A stretch of DNA of 64,000 nucleotides, taken from assembly GCA_002269645.1 (NCBI GenBank), contig NIVC01000007.1:106129-170128 (forward strand), given 5' to 3'. The notes below the pieces were generated by a model that saw only the letters and a program-made list of their open reading frames with translations, had not been told where the DNA came from and did not search any database. Position 1 is the stretch's first letter. Each line of letters opens with the position of its first letter. Both the position numbers and the translations under genes were made by a program. Below, piece after piece: positions 4,313 through 56,660 of the stretch. This DNA is from Macrostomum lignano. Its lineage: Eukaryota.

Positions 4313-29443
<25,131 letters not shown>

Positions 29444-40600: not shown

Positions 40601-43600
40601 CCCCCTTGACATCTCAGCAATGCCCCCAATAAGCCTTGGAAATCTAAAAATATCTGTCAACCTTCTAACCCTAACCCTAACCCTAACCCTAACCCTAACC
40701 TAACCCTAAAGCATTGAAATTTCAGTAATTCTCTCTAAGAGTCATAATAGCACTACTACAGCATTATAGCGATAAGCTTCTTTTATTTTTTACATAACGC
40801 TTTTTTTATCAGCGATCCCTCGCCTGAGGAGGCATCAAATAATGTAATAAAAAGTTTTCAATAAACTACATGTAGCTTCTGACTTTAGCCTTGAAATCTC
40901 ATTTATACCCCCGTGAGCCTTGACATCTCAGCTATTCCCCCCCGTAAGCCTTGACATGTCAGCGATGGCCCCCATAAACCTTGAAATCTAAAAAATCCAC
41001 TGTTAACCTTGAAACCCGATAAAATATAACCCTCAACCCACACCTGACCTAAACCTAACTTTAACCCAACCTAAAGCCTTGAAATCTCAGCAATTCTTCT
41101 CCCCTAAGCCTTGACATTTTAGTGATTCCTTCTTTAAGAATCACAGCACTATAACGATTTCCACCAAGCTTTGACATCGTAGCAATTCCCAAATGAATCT
41201 TTTAACTTCGACATGACTTTTCTTTTATGTATACATAGTGCTACTTTTATTTTTTACATGACTCTTCTTCTATCAGCACCCCCCCATGGCGAGCCAACAA
41301 AGAATGCAATAAAAATTGAGTAAAGTACATGAACTTTGAAGTAGCTTCTGACTTTTGCTTTGAGATCCCAGAAACAACCCCCCCCCTCGTAATCTCAGTT
41401 ATTCTCTGAGAGCCTTTACGTCTCAGTTTTTCTTCCCAGCACAGCATTATAGCTGCATTTTATTTTTACATGACACCCTTCATGTCTGACATGACGCTTC
41501 TTTTGATTTTTACATTACACTTCTTTTATTCTTCCATGATGCTTCTTAATTTTTTAAATGACGCTTTCATTAGTTTTTAAATGAGGCTTCTATGATTTTT
41601 TCATGACGCTTCTATGATTGTTTACATGACGCTTCTATGCTTTTTACATGACGCTTCTATGCTTTTTACATGACGCTTCTATGATTATTTCATGACGCTT
41701 CTATGATTGTTTACATGACGCTTCTATGATTATTTACATGATGCTTCTACGATTTCTGCAGGACGCTTCTATGATTTTTACATGATGCTTCTATGATTTT
41801 TTCATGACGCTTCTATGATTTTTTCATGACGCTTCCATGATTTTTTACATGACACTTCTATGATTTTTACATGACGCTTCCATGATTTTTTCATGACGCT
41901 TCTGTGATTGTTTATATGACGCTTTTATGCTTTTTATATGACGCTTCTATGATTTTTACATGACGCTTCTATGATTTTTACATGACGCTACTATGATTTT
42001 TACATGACGCTTCCATGATTTTTTACATGACGCTTCTATGATTTTTACATGACGCTTCTATGATTATTTCATGACGCTTCTACGATATCTGCAGGACGCT
42101 TCTATGATTTTTTACATGACGCTTCTATGATTTTTACATGACGCTTCCATGATTTTTTACATGACGCTTCTATGCTTTTTATATGACGATTCTATGATTT
42201 TTACATGACGTTTCTATGATTTTTACATGACGTTTCTATGATTTTTTCATGACGCTCCAATGTTTTTTTCATGACGCTTCTATGATTTTTTCATGACGCT
42301 TCTATGATTTTTACATGACGCTACTATGATTTTTACATGACGCTTCCATGATTTTTTACATGACGCTTCTATGATTTTTACATGACGCTTCTATGATTAT
42401 TTCATGACGCTTCTACGATATCTGCAGGACGCTTCTATGATTTTTTACATGACGCTTCTATGATTTTTACATGACGCTTCCATGATTTTTTACATGACGC
42501 TTCTATGCTTTTTATATGACGATTCTATGATTTTTACATGACGTTTCTATGATTTTTTCATGACGCTCCAATGTTTTTTTCATGACGCTTCTATGATTTT
42601 TTTCATGACGCTTCTATGATTTTTACATGACGCTACTATGATTTTTACATGACGCTTCCATGATTTTTTACATGACGCTTCTATGATTTTTACATGACGC
42701 TTCTATGATTATTTCATGACGCTTCTACGATATCTGCAGGACGCTTCTATGATTTTTTACATGACGCTTCTATGATTTTTTACATGACGCTTCTATGATT
42801 GTTTACATGACGCTTCTATGATTGTTTACATGACGCTTCTATGATTTTTTACATGACGCTTCTATGATTGTTTACATGACGCTTCTATGATTTTTTACAT
42901 GACGCTTCTATGATTGTTTACATGACGCTTCTATGATTTTTTACATGACGCTTCTATGATTTTTTACATGACGCTTCTATGATTGTTTACATGACGCTTC
43001 TATGATTTTTTACATGACGCTTCTATGATATTTTCATGACGCTTCTATGATTTTTTACATGACGCTTCTATGATTTTTTACATGACGCTTCTATGATTTT
43101 TTAGTTTTCTTCTTGGTGTTAAAAAGCTTTAATTAAAAAAATTCCACTCTCTAAAAATTCGAACCATCGTCCCTGCATTTAGCAGTCAGTCTGTTTACCT
43201 CTAGGCTAGCTCTCATCGTTTTGATAATATGAATTTTAGCACTTATAATTATAAGTTTCAAAACTCCAAGCATAGAGTAAATCACACGAGGCAGTTATGA
43301 CATAATCAATTTCTCAGTCAGTCAGTATCAGTTAACAATATGGTTACGCAATTTAAATCAAGTCTGGTGCTACGCTTCCACACTGCATTTTCAATTCAAG
43401 TCAGAGTTACAATTCAGTTATGATGCAATCTATTTCAGAATCAGAATTCAACCAGTCAGTTTTTTCTCTAGCATTCTTACAATGCATTTCAAGTCGAAAA
43501 GATTGCTTGACCTTTGCAAAAAAGCATGTTTTTCGAACATTTAATCCCTTTAACATGGAGCAATTTCTTAGCCAAGATGCATGTACCGTCACGGGAAAAT

Positions 43601-51189: not shown

Positions 51190-52620
51190 ACAAGGCACAT
51201 TTCAAGGCCTGGGTATGAACATAGGCTGCTCCACTAGCAGTGTCTGGGGCGCTGGCATCAGCCAGCAGGCAGTCAACAAAATGCCAAGTACACGCCTGCC
51301 CCTGCCGGTAGGGTGCCTGTAGTGTCAGCAGCAGCACCTCCTGCATCAGCTGTGGGCAGTACAACTTGGCTCAGATGAAACGGCCTGCTAGCTGGATTTG
51401 CTGATGGCGCAACAGTTCTCTGGTACGAGACAGGCCAGTGCGGCAATAGAGTGCCGCATTGGTGACTCACTTGTAACCGATCTTGAAGGCAGTGCGCAGC
51501 AGGCCAGCGTGGGCTGCATCGACCAGCTGTTTTTGTGAGTCCGTCAGCATCCAGGTCTTGGCGTTGTACAACAGGATGGTCTCGATTACCACCTGGAACA
51601 ATGCCCTCTAACAGTCAGGCAGGGCCTCGGACTGCAGGACAACCCTCATGGAATGCAGCTCAGTCAAGTCCACGGCGACGTCGCAGGTCCTCGCTAACGT
51701 CAGGCACCAGACCGCCGAGGTAGACGAACTGCTGACAGCACGAAAGCTTCGTCGCCTGTCCGTCGGCGCCTCGGCAGAAAATTGTAGCCCCGATGTCGTC
51801 CGGCACGCAGAGCACGACGGTCTTCTGCGTGTTGACCACCAGGCCGACGCTCGCCGCAACGCTCACCAGCCGGTCCAGCTGGCGTTGGGCGCCCTCGACG
51901 GTCGAGGACAGCAGGGCGAGATCATCGGCGTAGCCCAGAACGCTAAGCTGCCTTTCCGGTTGGCGTCGACCCACGCGTCGCTGCAACAGGAAGCCGTCGT
52001 GGACGTGGTTAGAAGGGAGAGCAGTCCGCAGCACCCAGTCAAGCACCAGGACGAACAGGAACGGCGCAAGCGTATCTCCCTGAACACCCCAGTGGATGTC
52101 TCAAAGAAATTTGACAGGCCGTCCGGTGTCAGCACAGCAGCATTCGTGCCATGATGTCTGGTGCAACTGGCCGTCATGTGCCGCGGTGGGGCCGGAAGCC
52201 GTTCTGTTTAGGACGCAGGTACGGATCCAGCACGGGCTGCAACCGCGATAACAGCATCCGGTTGAACAGCTTCGCAGCGCAGGACTGCAGGCAGATACCT
52301 CGGTGCTCCTCAAGCCGCGTGGTGCACGGCTTCTTCGGAATAGCGACGATGTGCACCGTGGTCCATTCGTTGGGTGCCGTCTCACCGAAAAGCACGCGGT
52401 TCATCACACTGGCGACCTCGCTGGCCACCCAGTGGAGTCGCAGCGCCTCGATGGGCACCTCGTCCGGGCCCAGCGCTTTCCCGTCCGGTGACTGTTGGGC
52501 GAGCCTCACAACTTCGGCTGTGCTGACTGGGGCTACATTAAAACTCTCCTCTGCCGGCAACGGCGTCTCCGGCGGCAGCCTCAGACTCAGATCGTTTGGC
52601 AGCGGGGGCATCGGCCTTGG
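51190..52620 (-). mobile_element. Decayed, 5'-truncated non-LTR retrotransposon (RTE-like reverse transcriptase)
   Basis: GKALGPDEVP, IVAIPKK, HRGICLQSCAAKLFNRMLLSRL, QNGFRP, GDTLAPFLF, GYADDLALL, GLVVNTQKT, FVYLG. Frameshifts, stops, and loss of the segment normally between GFR and the QG motif. Confidence 0.9.
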
Positions 52621-52983
52621 TCACAATTTCATCATATGTGGAAAGAATTGTGACCAAGGCTTGTCAACCCGTCGTGTAACTTCACATTATTAAAATGATT
52701 TAAAATTTGATAACACAACTGCCCAAGAGATGAGTGTGTCTGCATATTCAAGGGATTAGTCATATGACATGGTTGAGTCATATGAGCACAGGAGATGCAG
52801 TGAACTTGGCCTACTGTAGTGACTCAAAAGAAAGGTATAAGATAGTGCTGGCTCTGACAACCTGCTGCTTTGGTTTAGTAGCAGTGCTAAGGCAGTGTTA
52901 ACCGTGCTGCATTCCAGTTTCTCATCCGCCAGCTGCTCACCCGCGAGGCCCTGTGCCTCAGTCACAGCCGTGACCTGACCAGC

Positions 52984-54606
52984 ATGGCTGGCGGCAAGAT
53001 CAAACGGTTCTACAAGCAGGCCCACGTGACCAAATCCGGCCCCGGGGCCTACGAGGTCAACTTGGATCAGCGCAGACTGCGGACACCGGGCGGACAGCCG
53101 TTTGTTGTGCCGCACGAAGGTCTAGCATTGGCTGTGGTTCAGGAATGGAATTCTCAGGTTAATCATATTGACAGGTGAGGGCTGTTAATGGGCTAATGAC
53201 TCTAGCAGTTTCTACATATTTTTAGTGAGCGTTGATTGAAGTGTTGAGGTTCAAAAACGCTCGTAATCCCCAAGTTTGAGCACCTAAATTTCCCAAAATA
53301 TCTTCCCGTTTGAGCATCTAAATTCCCCAAAATATCCCCACGTTTGAGCACCACCTAACTTCCCCAGTGTTTGAGCTCATTAATCACCCGTCTCCCCGCA
53401 GGACCCGCATGCACCTGACCAGCCTGTGCAACTCGGCCATAGACAATCCGCTGGGACTGAGCCGCGACCAGCAGGCCGCCGCGATACTGGAGTACTTGGA
53501 AACTGACACCCTGCTGTTCTGGAGCACCGAGCCTGAAGATCTGCACCAGCTGCAGCGGCAGCGGTGGCAGCCTGTGCTTGACAACGTCAACCAGCAGTAC
53601 AGCCTGCGGCTGGCGCCAACTCTCACGCTGCAGCCGCCGCAGATTGACGGCGAAGCGTTGAAAAAGTTCAGAGCCAGACTGGCGTCGCTGAACTCTTGGG
53701 GCGTCTCCGGGGTCCGGTTCGCTGCCGAGAGTCTCAAGTCATGTCTGCTGGCTGTGTGTCTGCTTGACAGGTTGGTCTGACCTTCGTTGTCTTCAGCTTT
53801 GTGATGGATTCCAGGACTCCCAGATCCTCAGTTGCTGGGCCAGCCTCCCAGATCCTCAGTTGCTGGGCCAGCCTCCCAGAGTGTCAGTTGCTGGGCCAGC
53901 CTCCCAGATGCTCAGTTGCTGGGCCAGCCTCCCAGATCTTCAGTTGCTGGGCCAGCCTCCCAGAGTGTCAGTTGCTGGGCCAGCCTCCCAGAGTGTCAGT
54001 TGCTGGGCCAGCCTCCCAGAGTGTCAGTTTCTGGGCCAGCCTCCCAGATCCTCAGTTGCTAGGCCAGCCTCCCAGATCTTCAGTTGCTGGGCCAGCCTCC
54101 CAGATCCTCAGCTGCTGGGCCAGCCTCCCAGATCCTCAGTTGCTGGGCCAGCCTCCCAGATGCTCAGTTGCTGGGCCAGCCTCCCAGATCCTCAGTTGCT
54201 GGGCCAGCCTCGGAGATCCTCAGTTGCTGGGCCAGCCTCCCAGATCCTCAGTTGCTGGGCCAGCCTCCCAGATCCTCAGCTGCTGGGCCAGCCTCCCAGA
54301 TTCTCAGTTGCTGGGCCAGCCTCCCAGATGCTCAGTTGCTGGGCCATTGCCAACTTCATAAATCAATTTACACACGCACTGGCCCGCAGACGCCTCCCAG
54401 TCTCCGAGGCCTGCTCCCTCAGCCGGCTGGAGTCGCAGTTCCAGGCGGACAAGTGGGGCCAAGTGGAGTGGCACCATGGCGTTGATGCCACCGAGCTGGA
54501 GTGCCGCGTCTCTGCCGGCACACTGATGGCGCTTGTCAGCCACGAGTGGCGCGAAGTGCAGCTGGCTGGTGCGGCCGCCACCGCCGCCTCAAGGCAGGGG
54601 AAATAG
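52984..54606 (+). CDS. ATPAF2: ATP12/ATPAF2 mitochondrial F1-ATPase assembly factor, 3 exons; the true N-terminus probably extends in frame to 52918
   Basis: Exons 52984(52918)-53174, 53402-53770, 54390-54606, phases consistent. KRFYK...YEVNLDQRRLRTP...LALAVVQEWNSQ, MHLTSLCNSAIDNP, YLETDTLLF, SRLESQFQADKWGQVEWHH. Confidence 0.92.
53790..54350. repeat. 28-bp tandem array (CAGATCCTCAGTTGCTGGGCCAGCCTCC), about 20 copies, ATPAF2 intron 2
   Basis: Direct reading; lies between donor 53771 and acceptor 54389. Confidence 0.95.
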
Positions 54607-54624: not shown

Positions 54625-55520
54625 ATAGAGATTGGTAAAGTAGATCCCACAATATAGTTGGCAATGAGATTGGTGAAGTAGATCCCACAATATAGTTGGC
54701 AATGAGATTGGTAAAGTAGATCCCACAATATAGTTGGCAATGAGATTGGTGAAGTAGATCCCACAATATAGTTGGCAATAAGATTGGTAAAGTAGATCCC
54801 ACAATATAGTTGGCAATAAGATTGGTAAAGTAGATCCCACAATATAGTTGGCAATAAGATTGGTAAAGTAGATCCCACAATATAGTTGGCAATAAGATTG
54901 GTGAAGTAGATCCCACAATATAGTTGGCAATGAGATTGGTGAGGTAGATCCCACAATATAGTTGGCAATAAGATTGGTGAAGTAGATCCCACAATATAGT
55001 TGGCAATGAGATTAGTAAAGTAGATCCCACAATATAGTTGGCAATAAGATTGGTGAAGTAGATCCCACAATATAGTTGGCAATAAGATTGGTAAAGTAGA
55101 TCCCACAATATAGTTGGCAATGAGATTGGTGAGGTAGATCCCACAATATAGTTGGCAATAAGATTGGTAAAGTAGATCCCACAATATAGTTGGCAATGAG
55201 ATTAGTAAAGTAGATCCCACAATATAGTTGGCAATAAGATTGGTAAAGTAGATCCCACAATATAGTTGGCAATGAGATTAGTAAAGTAGATCCCACAATA
55301 TAGTTGGCAATAAGATTGGTGAAGTATATCCCACAATATAGTTGGCAATAAGATTGGTAAAGTAGATCCCACAATATAGTTGGCAATGAGATTGGTGAGG
55401 TAGATCCCACAATATAGTTGGCAATAAGATTGGTAAAGTAGATCCCACAATATAGTTGGCAATGAGATTAGTAAAGTAGATCCCACAATAATATTTGGAA
55501 GAGTTTGTTAAAGTAGATCC
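54625..55520. repeat. 38-bp tandem array (GATTGGTAAAGTAGATCCCACAATATAGTTGGCAATAA), about 23 copies, between ATPAF2 and MPDU1
   Basis: Direct reading; no unique spacers. Confidence 0.96.
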
Positions 55521-55829
55521 CGCATTGTCATACTGGCTGTTCTGCAAAATGTTGGGCCAGACCGAAAATGTGCACCAAAATTGTCAACGCATTTCTGATT
55601 GCCTTATTTGCTTGATGGTTTGCTGTCAATGCCGTCTTTGGTGTACCAGTGCTGCTGATCGGTAGCAATTATAATATAAAATAAAACATTTTTACTGAAT
55701 AAATGCTTTCTCAGCTACTATGAACTTCCAGTTGATTTGATTTTAAATTTCTTTTATTCTATTTTTTCTAATTTGAGACTAATCTGACTTTTAATGACTT
55801 TAGGTATTAACAATAGTGTAAAACAGGCA

Positions 55830-55990: not shown

Positions 55991-56018
55991 GCAAACAGAC
56001 GCTGCCAACCCGCCGCAG

Positions 56019-56660
56019 GCAGCCGCCGTAGCAGCCAAGGCACTGGGCTACTCAGTGATAGCTGGCTCAGCCAGCGTGAAGCTGCCGCAGCTCTTGAAGG
56101 TGTTCAACAGCGGCAGCAGCCGCGGCCTGTCCCCGGTGACCACAGCCTGCGAACTGGCGGCCTCCACTGTAGGCTTTCTGTACGGCCTTCGCCGGGGATT
56201 CCCGCTGAGCGCCTACGGCGAGGGCTTCCTACTGGCCGGCCAGACAATCGCCATCGCCGCCCTGTCCATCTACTACGCTAGAGGCCGGTCGCTGGGGCTC
56301 GCGTTGACCTTCTGCGCGATATTCGCTGGCTTGGTGGCCCTGCTGGCAGCGCCCAGTCTGGTGCCACTGGCTGTCATTGCGGCTGGCCAGGCGTGCACCC
56401 TGCCGCTGGTGCTGGCTGGCAAAGCTGCTCAGGCTTGGCGGAACTTCAGCTCGAGTAGCACCGGCCAGGTGTCGCTGATCACCTATTCGATGCTGCTGTT
56501 GGGCAGCCTGGCTCGAGTGTTCACCTCGGTGCAGGAGACTGCGGACCCAATGCTGGTTCTGCTGTACCTGGGGGCCAGCGCCGGCAATGCCGTCATTGTG
56601 GCTCAGATCCTCTACTATGGCGGCGCTGACAAGGGCAGAAGGAAGGAGAAGTCCGGATGA
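56019..56660 (+). CDS. MPDU1: Mannose-P-dolichol utilization defect 1 protein (PQ-loop family); main coding exon, start codon not identified
   Basis: After CAG (56016-56018): AAAVAAKALGYSVIAGSASVKLPQLLKVFNSGSSRGLS...GFPLSAYGE...QAWRNFSSSSTGQVSLIT...GSLARVFTSVQETADP, matching the two-PQ-repeat layout and the MPDU1 motifs VKLPQ, STGQLS and ARIFTSIQET. Confidence 0.9.
   Translation, partial: AAAVAAKALGYSVIAGSASVKLPQLLKVFNSGSSRGLSPVTTACELAASTVGFLYGLRRGFPLSAYGEGFLLAGQTIAIAALSIYYARGRSLGLALTFCAIFAGLVALLAAPSLVPLAVIAAGQACTLPLVLAGKAAQAWRNFSSSSTGQVSLITYSMLLLGSLARVFTSVQETADPMLVLLYLGASAGNAVIVAQILYYGGADKGRRKEKSG

What the first reader, a model, noticed from the sequence alone, without database searches (positions are those of the whole stretch)
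52911..53000. ATPAF2 mitochondrial presequence lacks its own ATG; a trans-spliced leader could supply it
Seen: an in-frame TAA (52888-52890) is followed by CATTCCAG| and then 22 open codons FLIRQLLTREALCLSHSRDLTS before Met 52984, in phase 0. Starting at 52984 gives 258 aa with almost no targeting peptide; adding M plus these 22 residues gives an Arg/Leu/Ser-rich presequence and 281 aa, close to typical ATP12 length. Established: flatworm spliced leaders end in AUG, which can serve as the initiator. Inference (depends on this being a flatworm): the leader AUG completes the protein and is needed for mitochondrial import; unspliced or alternative use of Met 52984 could give a differently localised isoform.
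Basis: partly seen in the sequence, partly recalled or inferred. Interest (0 to 1): 0.7.

Follow-up and report, generated by a model that had tools for sequence, protein, structure and literature searches.

The report
Spliced-leader AUG starts flatworm ATPAF2
This Macrostomum lignano (flatworm) gene for the mitochondrial ATP-synthase assembly factor ATPAF2 has no start codon of its own for its N-terminal extension and almost certainly borrows the AUG at the end of the trans-spliced leader; this trick is already well known in flatworms, so the case is correct but ordinary.

Summary
TAA lies at 52888-90 and CATTCCAG at 52910-17. Twenty-two open codons (FLIRQLLTREALCLSHSRDLTS) follow in phase 0, then ATG at 52984, giving 258 aa or 281 aa.

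The window is Macrostomum lignano (assembly Mlig_3_7, NIVC01000007.1). Its single 35-nt spliced leader ends in ATG. The published trans-acceptor motif [T/C]TNCAG matches TTCCAG|TTT here.

GenBank protein PAA94538.1 is marked "partial" and starts exactly at FLIRQ (52918). That annotation pipeline cuts transcripts at peaks of leader-bearing reads.

A diverged second copy (L001) has Ile instead of Met 52984, is otherwise intact, and shows pN/pS of 0.33 in its mature part. It cannot make a full ATP12 domain without an upstream AUG. With the leader Met, the N-terminal extension is 29 aa, against 24-46 aa in orthologs; from Met 52984 it is only 6 aa.

Two parts remain untested: that the extension is needed for import, and that a second isoform exists. 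Crude metrics make it only a mediocre presequence (net charge +1, two acidic residues).

Leader-AUG initiation is established in flatworms (Cheng et al. 2006), so this is a new member of a known kind.

Side finding: L001 reads ATG exactly where the window reads CAG. This is probably an imprint of RNA-seq polishing.

The parts
52888..52890 (+). In-frame TAA that closes the ATPAF2 frame upstream. No genome-encoded in-frame ATG lies between it and 52984.
52898..52902 (+). TTAAC, a branch-point-like motif 16-20 nt upstream of the AG (inferred). It is retained in all three copies. The 507-bp insertion in L001 lies just 5' of this block.
   Evidence: sequence; its function is inferred
52910..52917 (+). 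Trans-splice acceptor CATTCCAG. TTCCAG at 52912-17 matches the published M. lignano SL-acceptor motif [T/C]TNCAG.
   Evidence: The GenBank CDS starts at the next base.
52918..52983 (+). Twenty-two codons, FLIRQLLTREALCLSHSRDLTS. They form the N-terminal extension (putative mitochondrial presequence), readable only if an AUG is supplied 5' of 52918.
52984..52986 (+). Internal ATG (Met 23 of the long form) in a strong Kozak-type context (A at -3, G at +4). It is ATA (Ile) in the diverged copy L001.
52918..53174 (+). ATPAF2 exon 1 (donor GTGAGG at 53175)
   Evidence: 100% match to PAA94538.1; Pfam ATP12 E = 3e-38
53402..53770 (+). ATPAF2 exon 2
53817..54346 (.). 28-bp x 19 minisatellite inside intron 2 (intron 53771-54389)
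54390..54606 (+). ATPAF2 exon 3, ending in stop TAG at 54604-54606
54629..55521 (.). 38-bp x 23.5 minisatellite in the 3'UTR or intergenic region. AATAAA signals follow at 55680 and 55698.
56019..56660 (+). Downstream same-strand PQ-loop/MPDU1 homolog, a single exon that also has no genomic start codon. The acceptor-like CCGCAG|GCA at 56013-18|56019 would put the leader AUG in frame. This makes a probable two-gene operon with ATPAF2.
52617..52660 (+). Perfect 14-bp inverted repeat whose loop holds ATG at 52636-38. L001 has CAG there. It may be a second, upstream trans-splice site imprinted by RNA-seq polishing, or a real substitution.
52174..52611 (-). Antisense fragment of a non-LTR retrotransposon reverse transcriptase, immediately upstream of the gene
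   Evidence: RVT_1 E = 2e-4, below Pfam's cut-off

Best explanation
The pre-mRNA of this M. lignano ATPAF2 (ATP12) gene is trans-spliced at the acceptor TTCCAG|TTT (52917|52918) to the 35-nt spliced leader, whose last three bases are AUG. The mature mRNA then reads ...UUAUUGCAUG|UUU CUC AUC..., and the leader AUG, the first AUG on the mRNA, is in frame. It opens a 281-aa protein, M-FLIRQLLTREALCLSHSRDLTS-MAGGKIKRFYK..., whose first roughly 29 residues form the N-terminal extension that precedes the conserved ATP12 domain in orthologs and most likely acts as the matrix-targeting presequence.

Shown: the organism; the leader sequence (from the literature); the frame; the exact coincidence with the start of the annotated 5'-partial CDS; the loss of the internal Met in a constrained second copy.

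Inferred: that ribosomes start at the leader AUG on this particular mRNA; that the extension directs import. Leaky scanning to Met 52984 (strong context, against the leader AUG's weak one) could give a minor short form from this copy only.
For: - Organism and gene: the best hit is 100% identical to M. lignano PAA94538.1, and Pfam ATP12 scores E = 3e-38.
- Leader: it ends in ATG, and the acceptor motif [T/C]TNCAG sits at SL junctions. All flatworm leaders end in AUG, which can serve as the initiator. It is in frame in 28% of S. mansoni trans-spliced mRNAs and required by more than 40 cDNAs, and this usage is conserved in cestodes. In the genus Macrostomum the final ATG is regarded as the start codon.
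- Annotation: PAA94538.1 and PAA94620.1 are 'partial', are 280 aa long and start at FLIRQ, the first base after the AG, in two loci. Mlig_3_7 gene 5' ends were cut at peaks of leader-containing reads and ORFs were called with TransDecoder. The transcript model's 5' end therefore lies within 52916-52918.
- Second copy: L001 has ATA (Ile) instead of ATG 52984, no other in-frame Met before residue 89, an intact ORF, and pN/pS of 0.33 in the mature part.
- Orthologs: they carry 24-46 residues before the K/R-R-F-Y motif. The long form has 29 and the short form 6. MAFFT places the leader Met in the same column as the initiator Met of the Echinococcus and Schistocephalus orthologs.
- L001 reads ATG exactly where the leader AUG would sit. 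Whether this is real or an RNA-seq polishing imprint, it points to an AUG at that position in the mRNA.
Against: - No read or cDNA with the leader joined to TTTCTCATCC was seen. The collections reachable here hold no M. lignano transcript for this gene (all 7 cluster members are genome-derived).
- A leader AUG is in frame about one time in three by chance.
- By crude measures the extension is a mediocre presequence. Net charge is +1, there are two acidic residues (E11, D20), and the maximum hydrophobic moment is 0.40. Orthologs show +2 to +6, 0-1 acidic residues and 0.36-0.97.
- Substitutions in the 23 N-terminal codons between the copies are 3 non-synonymous to 1 synonymous. That shows no detectable constraint, although the counts are tiny.
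- The leader AUG has a weak context (U at -3, U at +4), while Met 52984 has an optimal one.
Confidence: 0.8

Rival explanations
1. The leader is added at 52918, but the 66 nt after it are functionally 5'UTR. Translation of the working protein starts at Met 52984, and import relies on the very basic start of the ATP12 domain (MAGGKIKRFYKQAHVTK).
For: Met 52984 has an optimal context (A at -3, G at +4), while the leader AUG has a weak one. The short form's first 25 residues have net charge +4 and a hydrophobic moment of 0.64, more presequence-like on these crude measures than the long form. There is no detectable constraint on the 22 codons. In-frame leader AUGs occur at about the chance rate.
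Against: The leader AUG is the first AUG and is in frame with no stop, so any initiation there gives the long form. The constrained second copy has Ile at this position and no other usable Met. Orthologs all carry 24-46 residues before KRFY, apart from two unidentified sequences with 6-7.
Confidence: 0.12
2. A cis-spliced upstream exon supplies the ATG, for example ATGAGCACAGGAGATGCA|GTGAAC at 52782-52799 joined to 52918, and the gene is not trans-spliced at this site.
For: That exon would be in phase, giving MSTGDA-FLIRQ.... The upstream region is conserved between copies at the general 95% level.
Against: The RNA-seq-based GenBank models in two loci stop at 52918 and are flagged partial; a cis ATG exon would have given a complete CDS. 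The donor GCA|GTGAAC matches only 4 of 9 consensus positions. Seventy-eight in-phase ATG...GT candidates exist by chance within 2 kb. In L001 a 507-bp insertion separates this candidate from the acceptor.
Confidence: 0.04
3. The two copy types differ for real. The window type obtains its AUG from the leader through a CAG acceptor. The L001 type has lost the acceptor and gained a genome-encoded ATG at the identical position, so it uses cis initiation.
For: The L001 assembly reads CATTCATG|TTTCTC where the window and L003 read CATTCCAG|TTTCTC. L001 has also lost the internal Met.
Against: - Mlig_3_7 was polished with RNA-seq reads, and the leader ends in CATG, exactly the L001 string.
- The ML2-derived UniRef protein with L001-type residues starts FQFLIRQ, which implies TTCCAG.
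- GenBank still annotates L001 as 5'-partial from FLIRQ.
- A second CAG/ATG swap sits 280 nt upstream, in the opposite direction. Most of the other 13 adjacent double substitutions (14 counted in 7.4 kb, which includes the 52915-17 swap) are the CpG type, CA<->TG.
Confidence: 0.25

Closest known systems
[quoted passage not shown]
   Same: The leader ends in AUG, the acceptor places it in frame with the main ORF, and there is no genome-encoded AUG for the conserved N-terminus. The leader Met is needed to match ortholog N-termini, as described for more than 40 S. mansoni cDNAs and for E. granulosus transcripts.
   Different: This is a free-living macrostomid rather than a parasitic neodermatan. 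No paper found here counts leader-AUG use in M. lignano, and this gene is not mentioned by ID. A downstream in-frame Met exists in one copy type but not the other.
ATP12 / ATPAF2, the mitochondrial F1-ATPase alpha-subunit assembly chaperone (Pfam PF07542)
   Same: A full-length ATP12 domain (E = 3e-38), 39-44% identity to metazoan ATPAF2, the same length class (281 aa against 265-299 aa), and conserved KRFYK, LRTP and NP motifs.
   Different: The N-terminal extension is less basic and carries two acidic residues. The start codon is not in the gene.
SL-resolved operons of M. lignano (Ustyantsev & Berezikov 2021, PMC8629364)
   Same: Two same-strand genes, ATPAF2 then the MPDU1 homolog. The repeat-adjusted gap between the poly(A) signal and the next acceptor is well under 1 kb, and the order is kept in all three copies.
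   Different: Operon status is inferred from spacing only. The MPDU1 acceptor was not pinned down, because the annotated partial starts differ among copies.

Membership tests
Leader-AUG-initiated ORF (flatworm SL initiator methionine) | The organism trans-splices a leader whose 3' end is AUG | tested here: met
   The window is M. lignano. The 35-nt leader ...TTATTGCATG is given in PMC8629364.
Leader-AUG-initiated ORF (flatworm SL initiator methionine) | The leader is actually joined at this acceptor in mature mRNA | tested here: inconclusive
   The evidence is indirect. The 5'-partial GenBank CDS starts at the first base after the AG in two loci, and it comes from a pipeline that cuts at leader-read peaks. 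The YTNCAG motif is present. No junction read was seen.
Leader-AUG-initiated ORF (flatworm SL initiator methionine) | The leader AUG is in frame with the main ORF, with no intervening stop | tested here: met
   Phase 0; 22 sense codons up to Met 52984
Leader-AUG-initiated ORF (flatworm SL initiator methionine) | The leader Met is required to reproduce the conserved N-terminus or a functional protein | tested here: met
   Ortholog extensions are 24-46 aa, against 29 (long form) and 6 (short form) here. Copy L001 has Ile instead of the internal Met and is under purifying selection.
Leader-AUG-initiated ORF (flatworm SL initiator methionine) | Translation initiation at the leader AUG is demonstrated | not testable with these tools
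   This needs ribosome profiling, proteomics or reporter assays.
ATP12/ATPAF2 | An ATP12 domain above Pfam's gathering score, and orthology to metazoan ATPAF2 | tested here: met
   PF07542 scores 131 bits against a cut-off of 27. The best non-self hits are annotated ATPAF2 from echinoderms and cestodes at 39-44% identity.
Cleavable mitochondrial matrix presequence | 15-50 N-terminal residues, net positive charge, few acidic residues, an amphipathic helix, and an R-2/R-3 processing motif | tested here: inconclusive
   The length fits. Net charge is only +1, with E11 and D20, and the maximum hydrophobic moment of 0.40 is at the low end of the orthologs' range. R-D-L|T-S could be an R-3 site (my reading). 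No dedicated predictor was available.
M. lignano SL-resolved operon | Adjacent same-strand genes less than 1 kb apart after subtracting repeats, with the downstream gene trans-spliced | tested here: inconclusive
   The spacing criterion is met: AATAAA at 55680/55698, an acceptor near 56018, and 171 nt of the gap made of (AGAC)n. Trans-splicing of MPDU1 is inferred from its missing ATG.

The most novel reading that the evidence does not exclude
The homeologous ATPAF2 copies of this hidden polyploid may really differ in how they get their start codon. One copy type would use a CAG acceptor and borrow the leader AUG, keeping a second internal Met. The other would have converted that very CAG into a genome-encoded ATG and lost the internal Met. 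That would be a caught-in-the-act interconversion between trans-supplied and cis-encoded initiation. The mirror-image CAG/ATG swap 280 nt upstream would move the trans-splice site, so that only the window-type copy could make a short, possibly non-mitochondrial isoform.
Probability: 0.15. Interest if true: 0.55.

Novelty: new member of a known kind. Interest (0 to 1): 0.25.

Why it matters
For the biology, it matters little. It adds one clear example, probably two with the neighbouring MPDU1 homolog, in a free-living model flatworm of a mechanism known since 2006.

In practice, it explains why GenBank lists these proteins as 'partial'. Such M. lignano models should be completed by adding the leader Met, which changes predictions of localisation.

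The side observation could matter more for users of the reference genome. Mlig_3_7 was polished with RNA-seq reads. If leader-bearing reads overwrote CAG acceptors with ATG, the assembly contains false start codons and destroyed splice sites at highly expressed trans-spliced genes. A genome-wide check would be simple.

Tried and rejected
- SL RNA gene in the window: no match to the leader with up to 3 mismatches and no Rfam family at gathering score. This was expected and is uninformative.
- Direct transcript evidence: the 90% identity cluster of the protein has 7 members, all from genome annotations and none starting with M or with leader-derived residues. No transcript was reachable.
- Gene IDs Mlig007483 and Mlig018211 occur in no paper text, nor in the held supplements of PMC5816591 or PMC5730564. 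PMC8629364 has no held supplements.
- I recalled the S. mansoni phytochelatin synthase as a possible precedent for a leader-dependent mitochondrial isoform. The paper says it is not trans-spliced, so I rejected it.
- My first alignment of the two copies suggested that homology ends 25 nt upstream of the acceptor. BLAST showed this is a 507-bp insertion in L001 and that the upstream homology resumes, so I dropped the idea of unrelated promoters. The tRNA-like stretch in that insertion is not called as a tRNA.
- The annotated partial starts of the MPDU1 homolog differ among identical copies, so they cannot be used to fix its acceptor.

Full report
**1. Observation**

- TAA lies at 52888-52890, in the frame of the ATP12 ORF.
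- CATTCCAG lies at 52910-52917.
- From 52918 there are 22 sense codons, FLIRQLLTREALCLSHSRDLTS, and then ATG at 52984.
- With exons 52984-53174, 53402-53770 and 54390-54606 the protein is 258 aa. With M plus the 22 codons it is 281 aa.
- Pfam ATP12 (PF07542) matches residues 7-126 of the short form at E = 3e-38.

**2. What and whose gene it is**

The protein search returned a 100% identical, 280-aa entry, 'hypothetical protein BOX15_Mlig007483g1, partial [Macrostomum lignano]' (PAA94538.1). The next hits are ATPAF2 of echinoderms, cestodes and other invertebrates at 39-44% identity.

The encoding contig is NIVC01000007.1 of GCA_002269645.1 (Mlig_3_7). Locus L002 is base-for-base the window.

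**3. The leader and the acceptor**

M. lignano has a single 35-nt spliced leader, CGGTCTCTTACTGCGAAGACTCAATTTATTGCATG, on about 30% of its genes. The top motif at its trans-splice acceptors is [T/C]TNCAG, located right at the junction (PMC8629364). The window has TTCCAG|TTT at 52912-17|52918, which matches. The motif alone would occur about once per 500 nt.

All described flatworm leaders end in AUG, which can act as the initiator. In S. mansoni it is in frame in 28% of trans-spliced mRNAs, and more than 40 cDNAs need it (Cheng et al. 2006, as reported in PMC12582326 and PMC9851317). In E. granulosus the usage is conserved with schistosomes (PMC3510090). For the genus Macrostomum the terminal ATG is described as the translation start codon (PMC10468722).

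**4. Independent support for the junction**

The GenBank protein starts FLIRQ..., the first base after the AG, and is flagged partial. The same holds for the second copy, PAA94620.1, on NIVC01000006.1 (L001).

The Mlig_3_7 annotation was built in three steps: leader-trimmed reads were mapped, transcriptional units were cut at the resulting peaks (TBONE), and ORFs were called with TransDecoder (PMC5730564).

The frame stays open for nine more codons upstream (GSVNRAAFQ). A 5'-partial ORF that begins at TTT therefore means the transcript model's 5' end is within 52916-52918, which is the proposed trans-splice site. This is indirect evidence. I could not see a junction read.

**5. The second copy needs an upstream AUG**

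L001 differs from the window by about 4-5%. Its N-terminus reads FLIRQLLTCEALCLSHSRGLTS-I-AGGKIKRFYK, with ATA where the window has ATG 52984.

Its ORF is otherwise intact. Between the copies the mature part has 7 synonymous and 7 non-synonymous differences (pN/pS 0.33), consistent with purifying selection on both. The next in-frame Met is at about residue 89, inside the ATP12 domain.

That copy can only make a functional protein from an AUG placed 5' of FLIRQ. A third copy (L003, NIVC01000166.1) is about 99% identical to the window and has the same CAG and ATG.

**6. N-terminal length and nature of the extension**

Full-length orthologs have 24-46 residues before the conserved K/R-R-F-Y motif. 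The leader-initiated form has 29 and the Met 52984 form has 6. In a MAFFT alignment the leader Met falls in the column of the initiator Met of the Echinococcus and Schistocephalus proteins.

As a presequence it is only fair:

| Measure (first 25 residues) | Long form here | Orthologs |
|---|---|---|
| Net charge | +1 | +2 to +6 |
| Acidic residues | 2 | 0-1 |
| Maximum hydrophobic moment | 0.40 | 0.36-0.97 |

Between the two copies the 23 N-terminal codons carry 3 non-synonymous changes and 1 synonymous change. That fits a fast-evolving presequence but does not prove coding. 'Completes the protein' is therefore well supported, while 'needed for import' remains an inference.

**7. A possible second isoform**

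The leader AUG has U at -3 and U at +4. Met 52984 has A at -3 and G at +4. Leaky scanning could therefore yield some short form from the window-type copies. The Ile in L001 shows that such a form is not required from every copy.

**8. An oddity that bears on the question**

Where the window and L003 read CATTCCAG|TTTCTC, L001 reads CATTCATG|TTTCTC. That is a genomic ATG at the exact place of the leader AUG, with no AG.

A mirror-image swap lies 280 nt upstream. The window and L003 have ATG at 52636-38 and L001 has CAG (tttcatcatCAG|tggaaag). The substitution count covered 7.4 kb of clean alignment but omitted the block that holds 52636. It found 14 adjacent double substitutions. One of them is the CA-to-AT swap at 52915-17, and most of the others are the CpG type, CA<->TG.

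Mlig_3_7 was polished with Pilon using RNA-seq as well as DNA reads, and the leader ends in CATG. A UniRef protein from the older ML2 assembly carries L001-type residues yet starts FQFLIRQ, which implies TTCCAG.

I therefore think both ATGs are most likely imprints of leader-bearing reads. If so, they are accidental RNA evidence for a leader junction at 52918, and perhaps for another at 52639. The alternative is a real conversion of acceptor to cis ATG. Either way an AUG sits immediately 5' of UUUCUC in the mRNA.

**9. Rivals**

A cis ATG exon such as 52782-52799 is possible on paper. Against it:
- its donor matches only 4 of 9 consensus positions;
- 78 such in-phase candidates exist by chance in 2 kb;
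- the RNA-based models do not contain it.

Initiation only at Met 52984 conflicts with the Ile-bearing copy and with the ortholog N-terminal lengths.

**10. Surroundings**

- Upstream lies an antisense LINE reverse-transcriptase fragment at 52174-52611.
- In L001 a 507-bp insertion sits 22 nt upstream of the acceptor, just 5' of a TTAAC branch-point-like motif. It leaves the 25-nt acceptor unit untouched.
- Downstream come a 38-bp minisatellite and AATAAA at 55680 and 55698.
- Next is a single-exon PQ-loop/MPDU1 homolog at 56019-56660. It also lacks any in-frame genomic ATG before about residue 160. Its first PQ-loop starts at residue 7, and CCGCAG|GCA would put the leader AUG in frame.
- The pair looks like a two-gene operon by the published spacing criterion. 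The order is the same in all three copies.

**11. Verdict**

It is an instance of a mechanism established in flatworms in 2006, and the public annotation already reflects it implicitly by calling the CDS 'partial'. The novelty class is new member of a known kind, and interest is low to moderate. What remains open is direct junction or initiation evidence, the import role, and whether the CAG/ATG swaps are assembly artefacts.

Noticed in passing
window 56013-56660 (+); L001 12540-13242; L003 9990-10636: The next gene downstream, a single-exon PQ-loop/MPDU1 homolog, also has no genome-encoded start codon. Its first in-frame ATG is at about residue 160, and its PQ-loop domain begins at residue 7. 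The acceptor-like CCGCAG|GCA would place the leader AUG in frame (M-AAAVAAKALGYS...). An older UniRef model fuses it to ATPAF2 as a 490-aa protein.
   Followed up: partly
window 52915-52917 vs L001 9998-10000; window 52636-52638 vs L001 about 9231-9233: There are two CAG<->ATG double substitutions between gene copies, in opposite directions, both at or near the ATPAF2 5' end. The assembly was polished with RNA-seq reads and the leader ends in CATG, so these may be leader imprints in the reference genome, which would mean false ATGs and destroyed acceptors.
   Followed up: partly
L001 9469-9975: A 507-bp insertion, present only in the diverged copy, lies 22 nt upstream of the trans-splice acceptor. 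It contains a tRNA-T-arm-like stretch (GGGAATCGAACCAGGGTCC), but ARAGORN calls no tRNA. It is possibly a SINE-type element.
   Followed up: partly
window 52617-52660: A perfect 14-bp inverted repeat, CCTTGGTCACAATT...AATTGTGACCAAGG, with a 16-nt loop, lies between the antisense LINE fragment and the ATPAF2 acceptor. It is conserved in all three copies except for the ATG/CAG in the loop.
   Followed up: no
window 1-64000, e.g. 18197-20356, 41489-43103, 53817-54346, 54629-55521: Minisatellite density is extreme: about 35 distinct arrays with periods of 4-91 bp (50 overlapping TRF rows). They include a 2.2-kb CCCTCTCCCCTTCT array (GC skew -0.92), a 28-bp array inside ATPAF2 intron 2 and a 38-bp array in its 3' region. 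Copy numbers differ between the gene copies.
   Followed up: no
L003 6994-8654 (NIVC01000166.1): A third ATPAF2 copy, with exons 100% identical to the window, has no called gene in the collection, although its MPDU1 neighbour does. This looks like an annotation gap in a near-identical duplicate.
   Followed up: no
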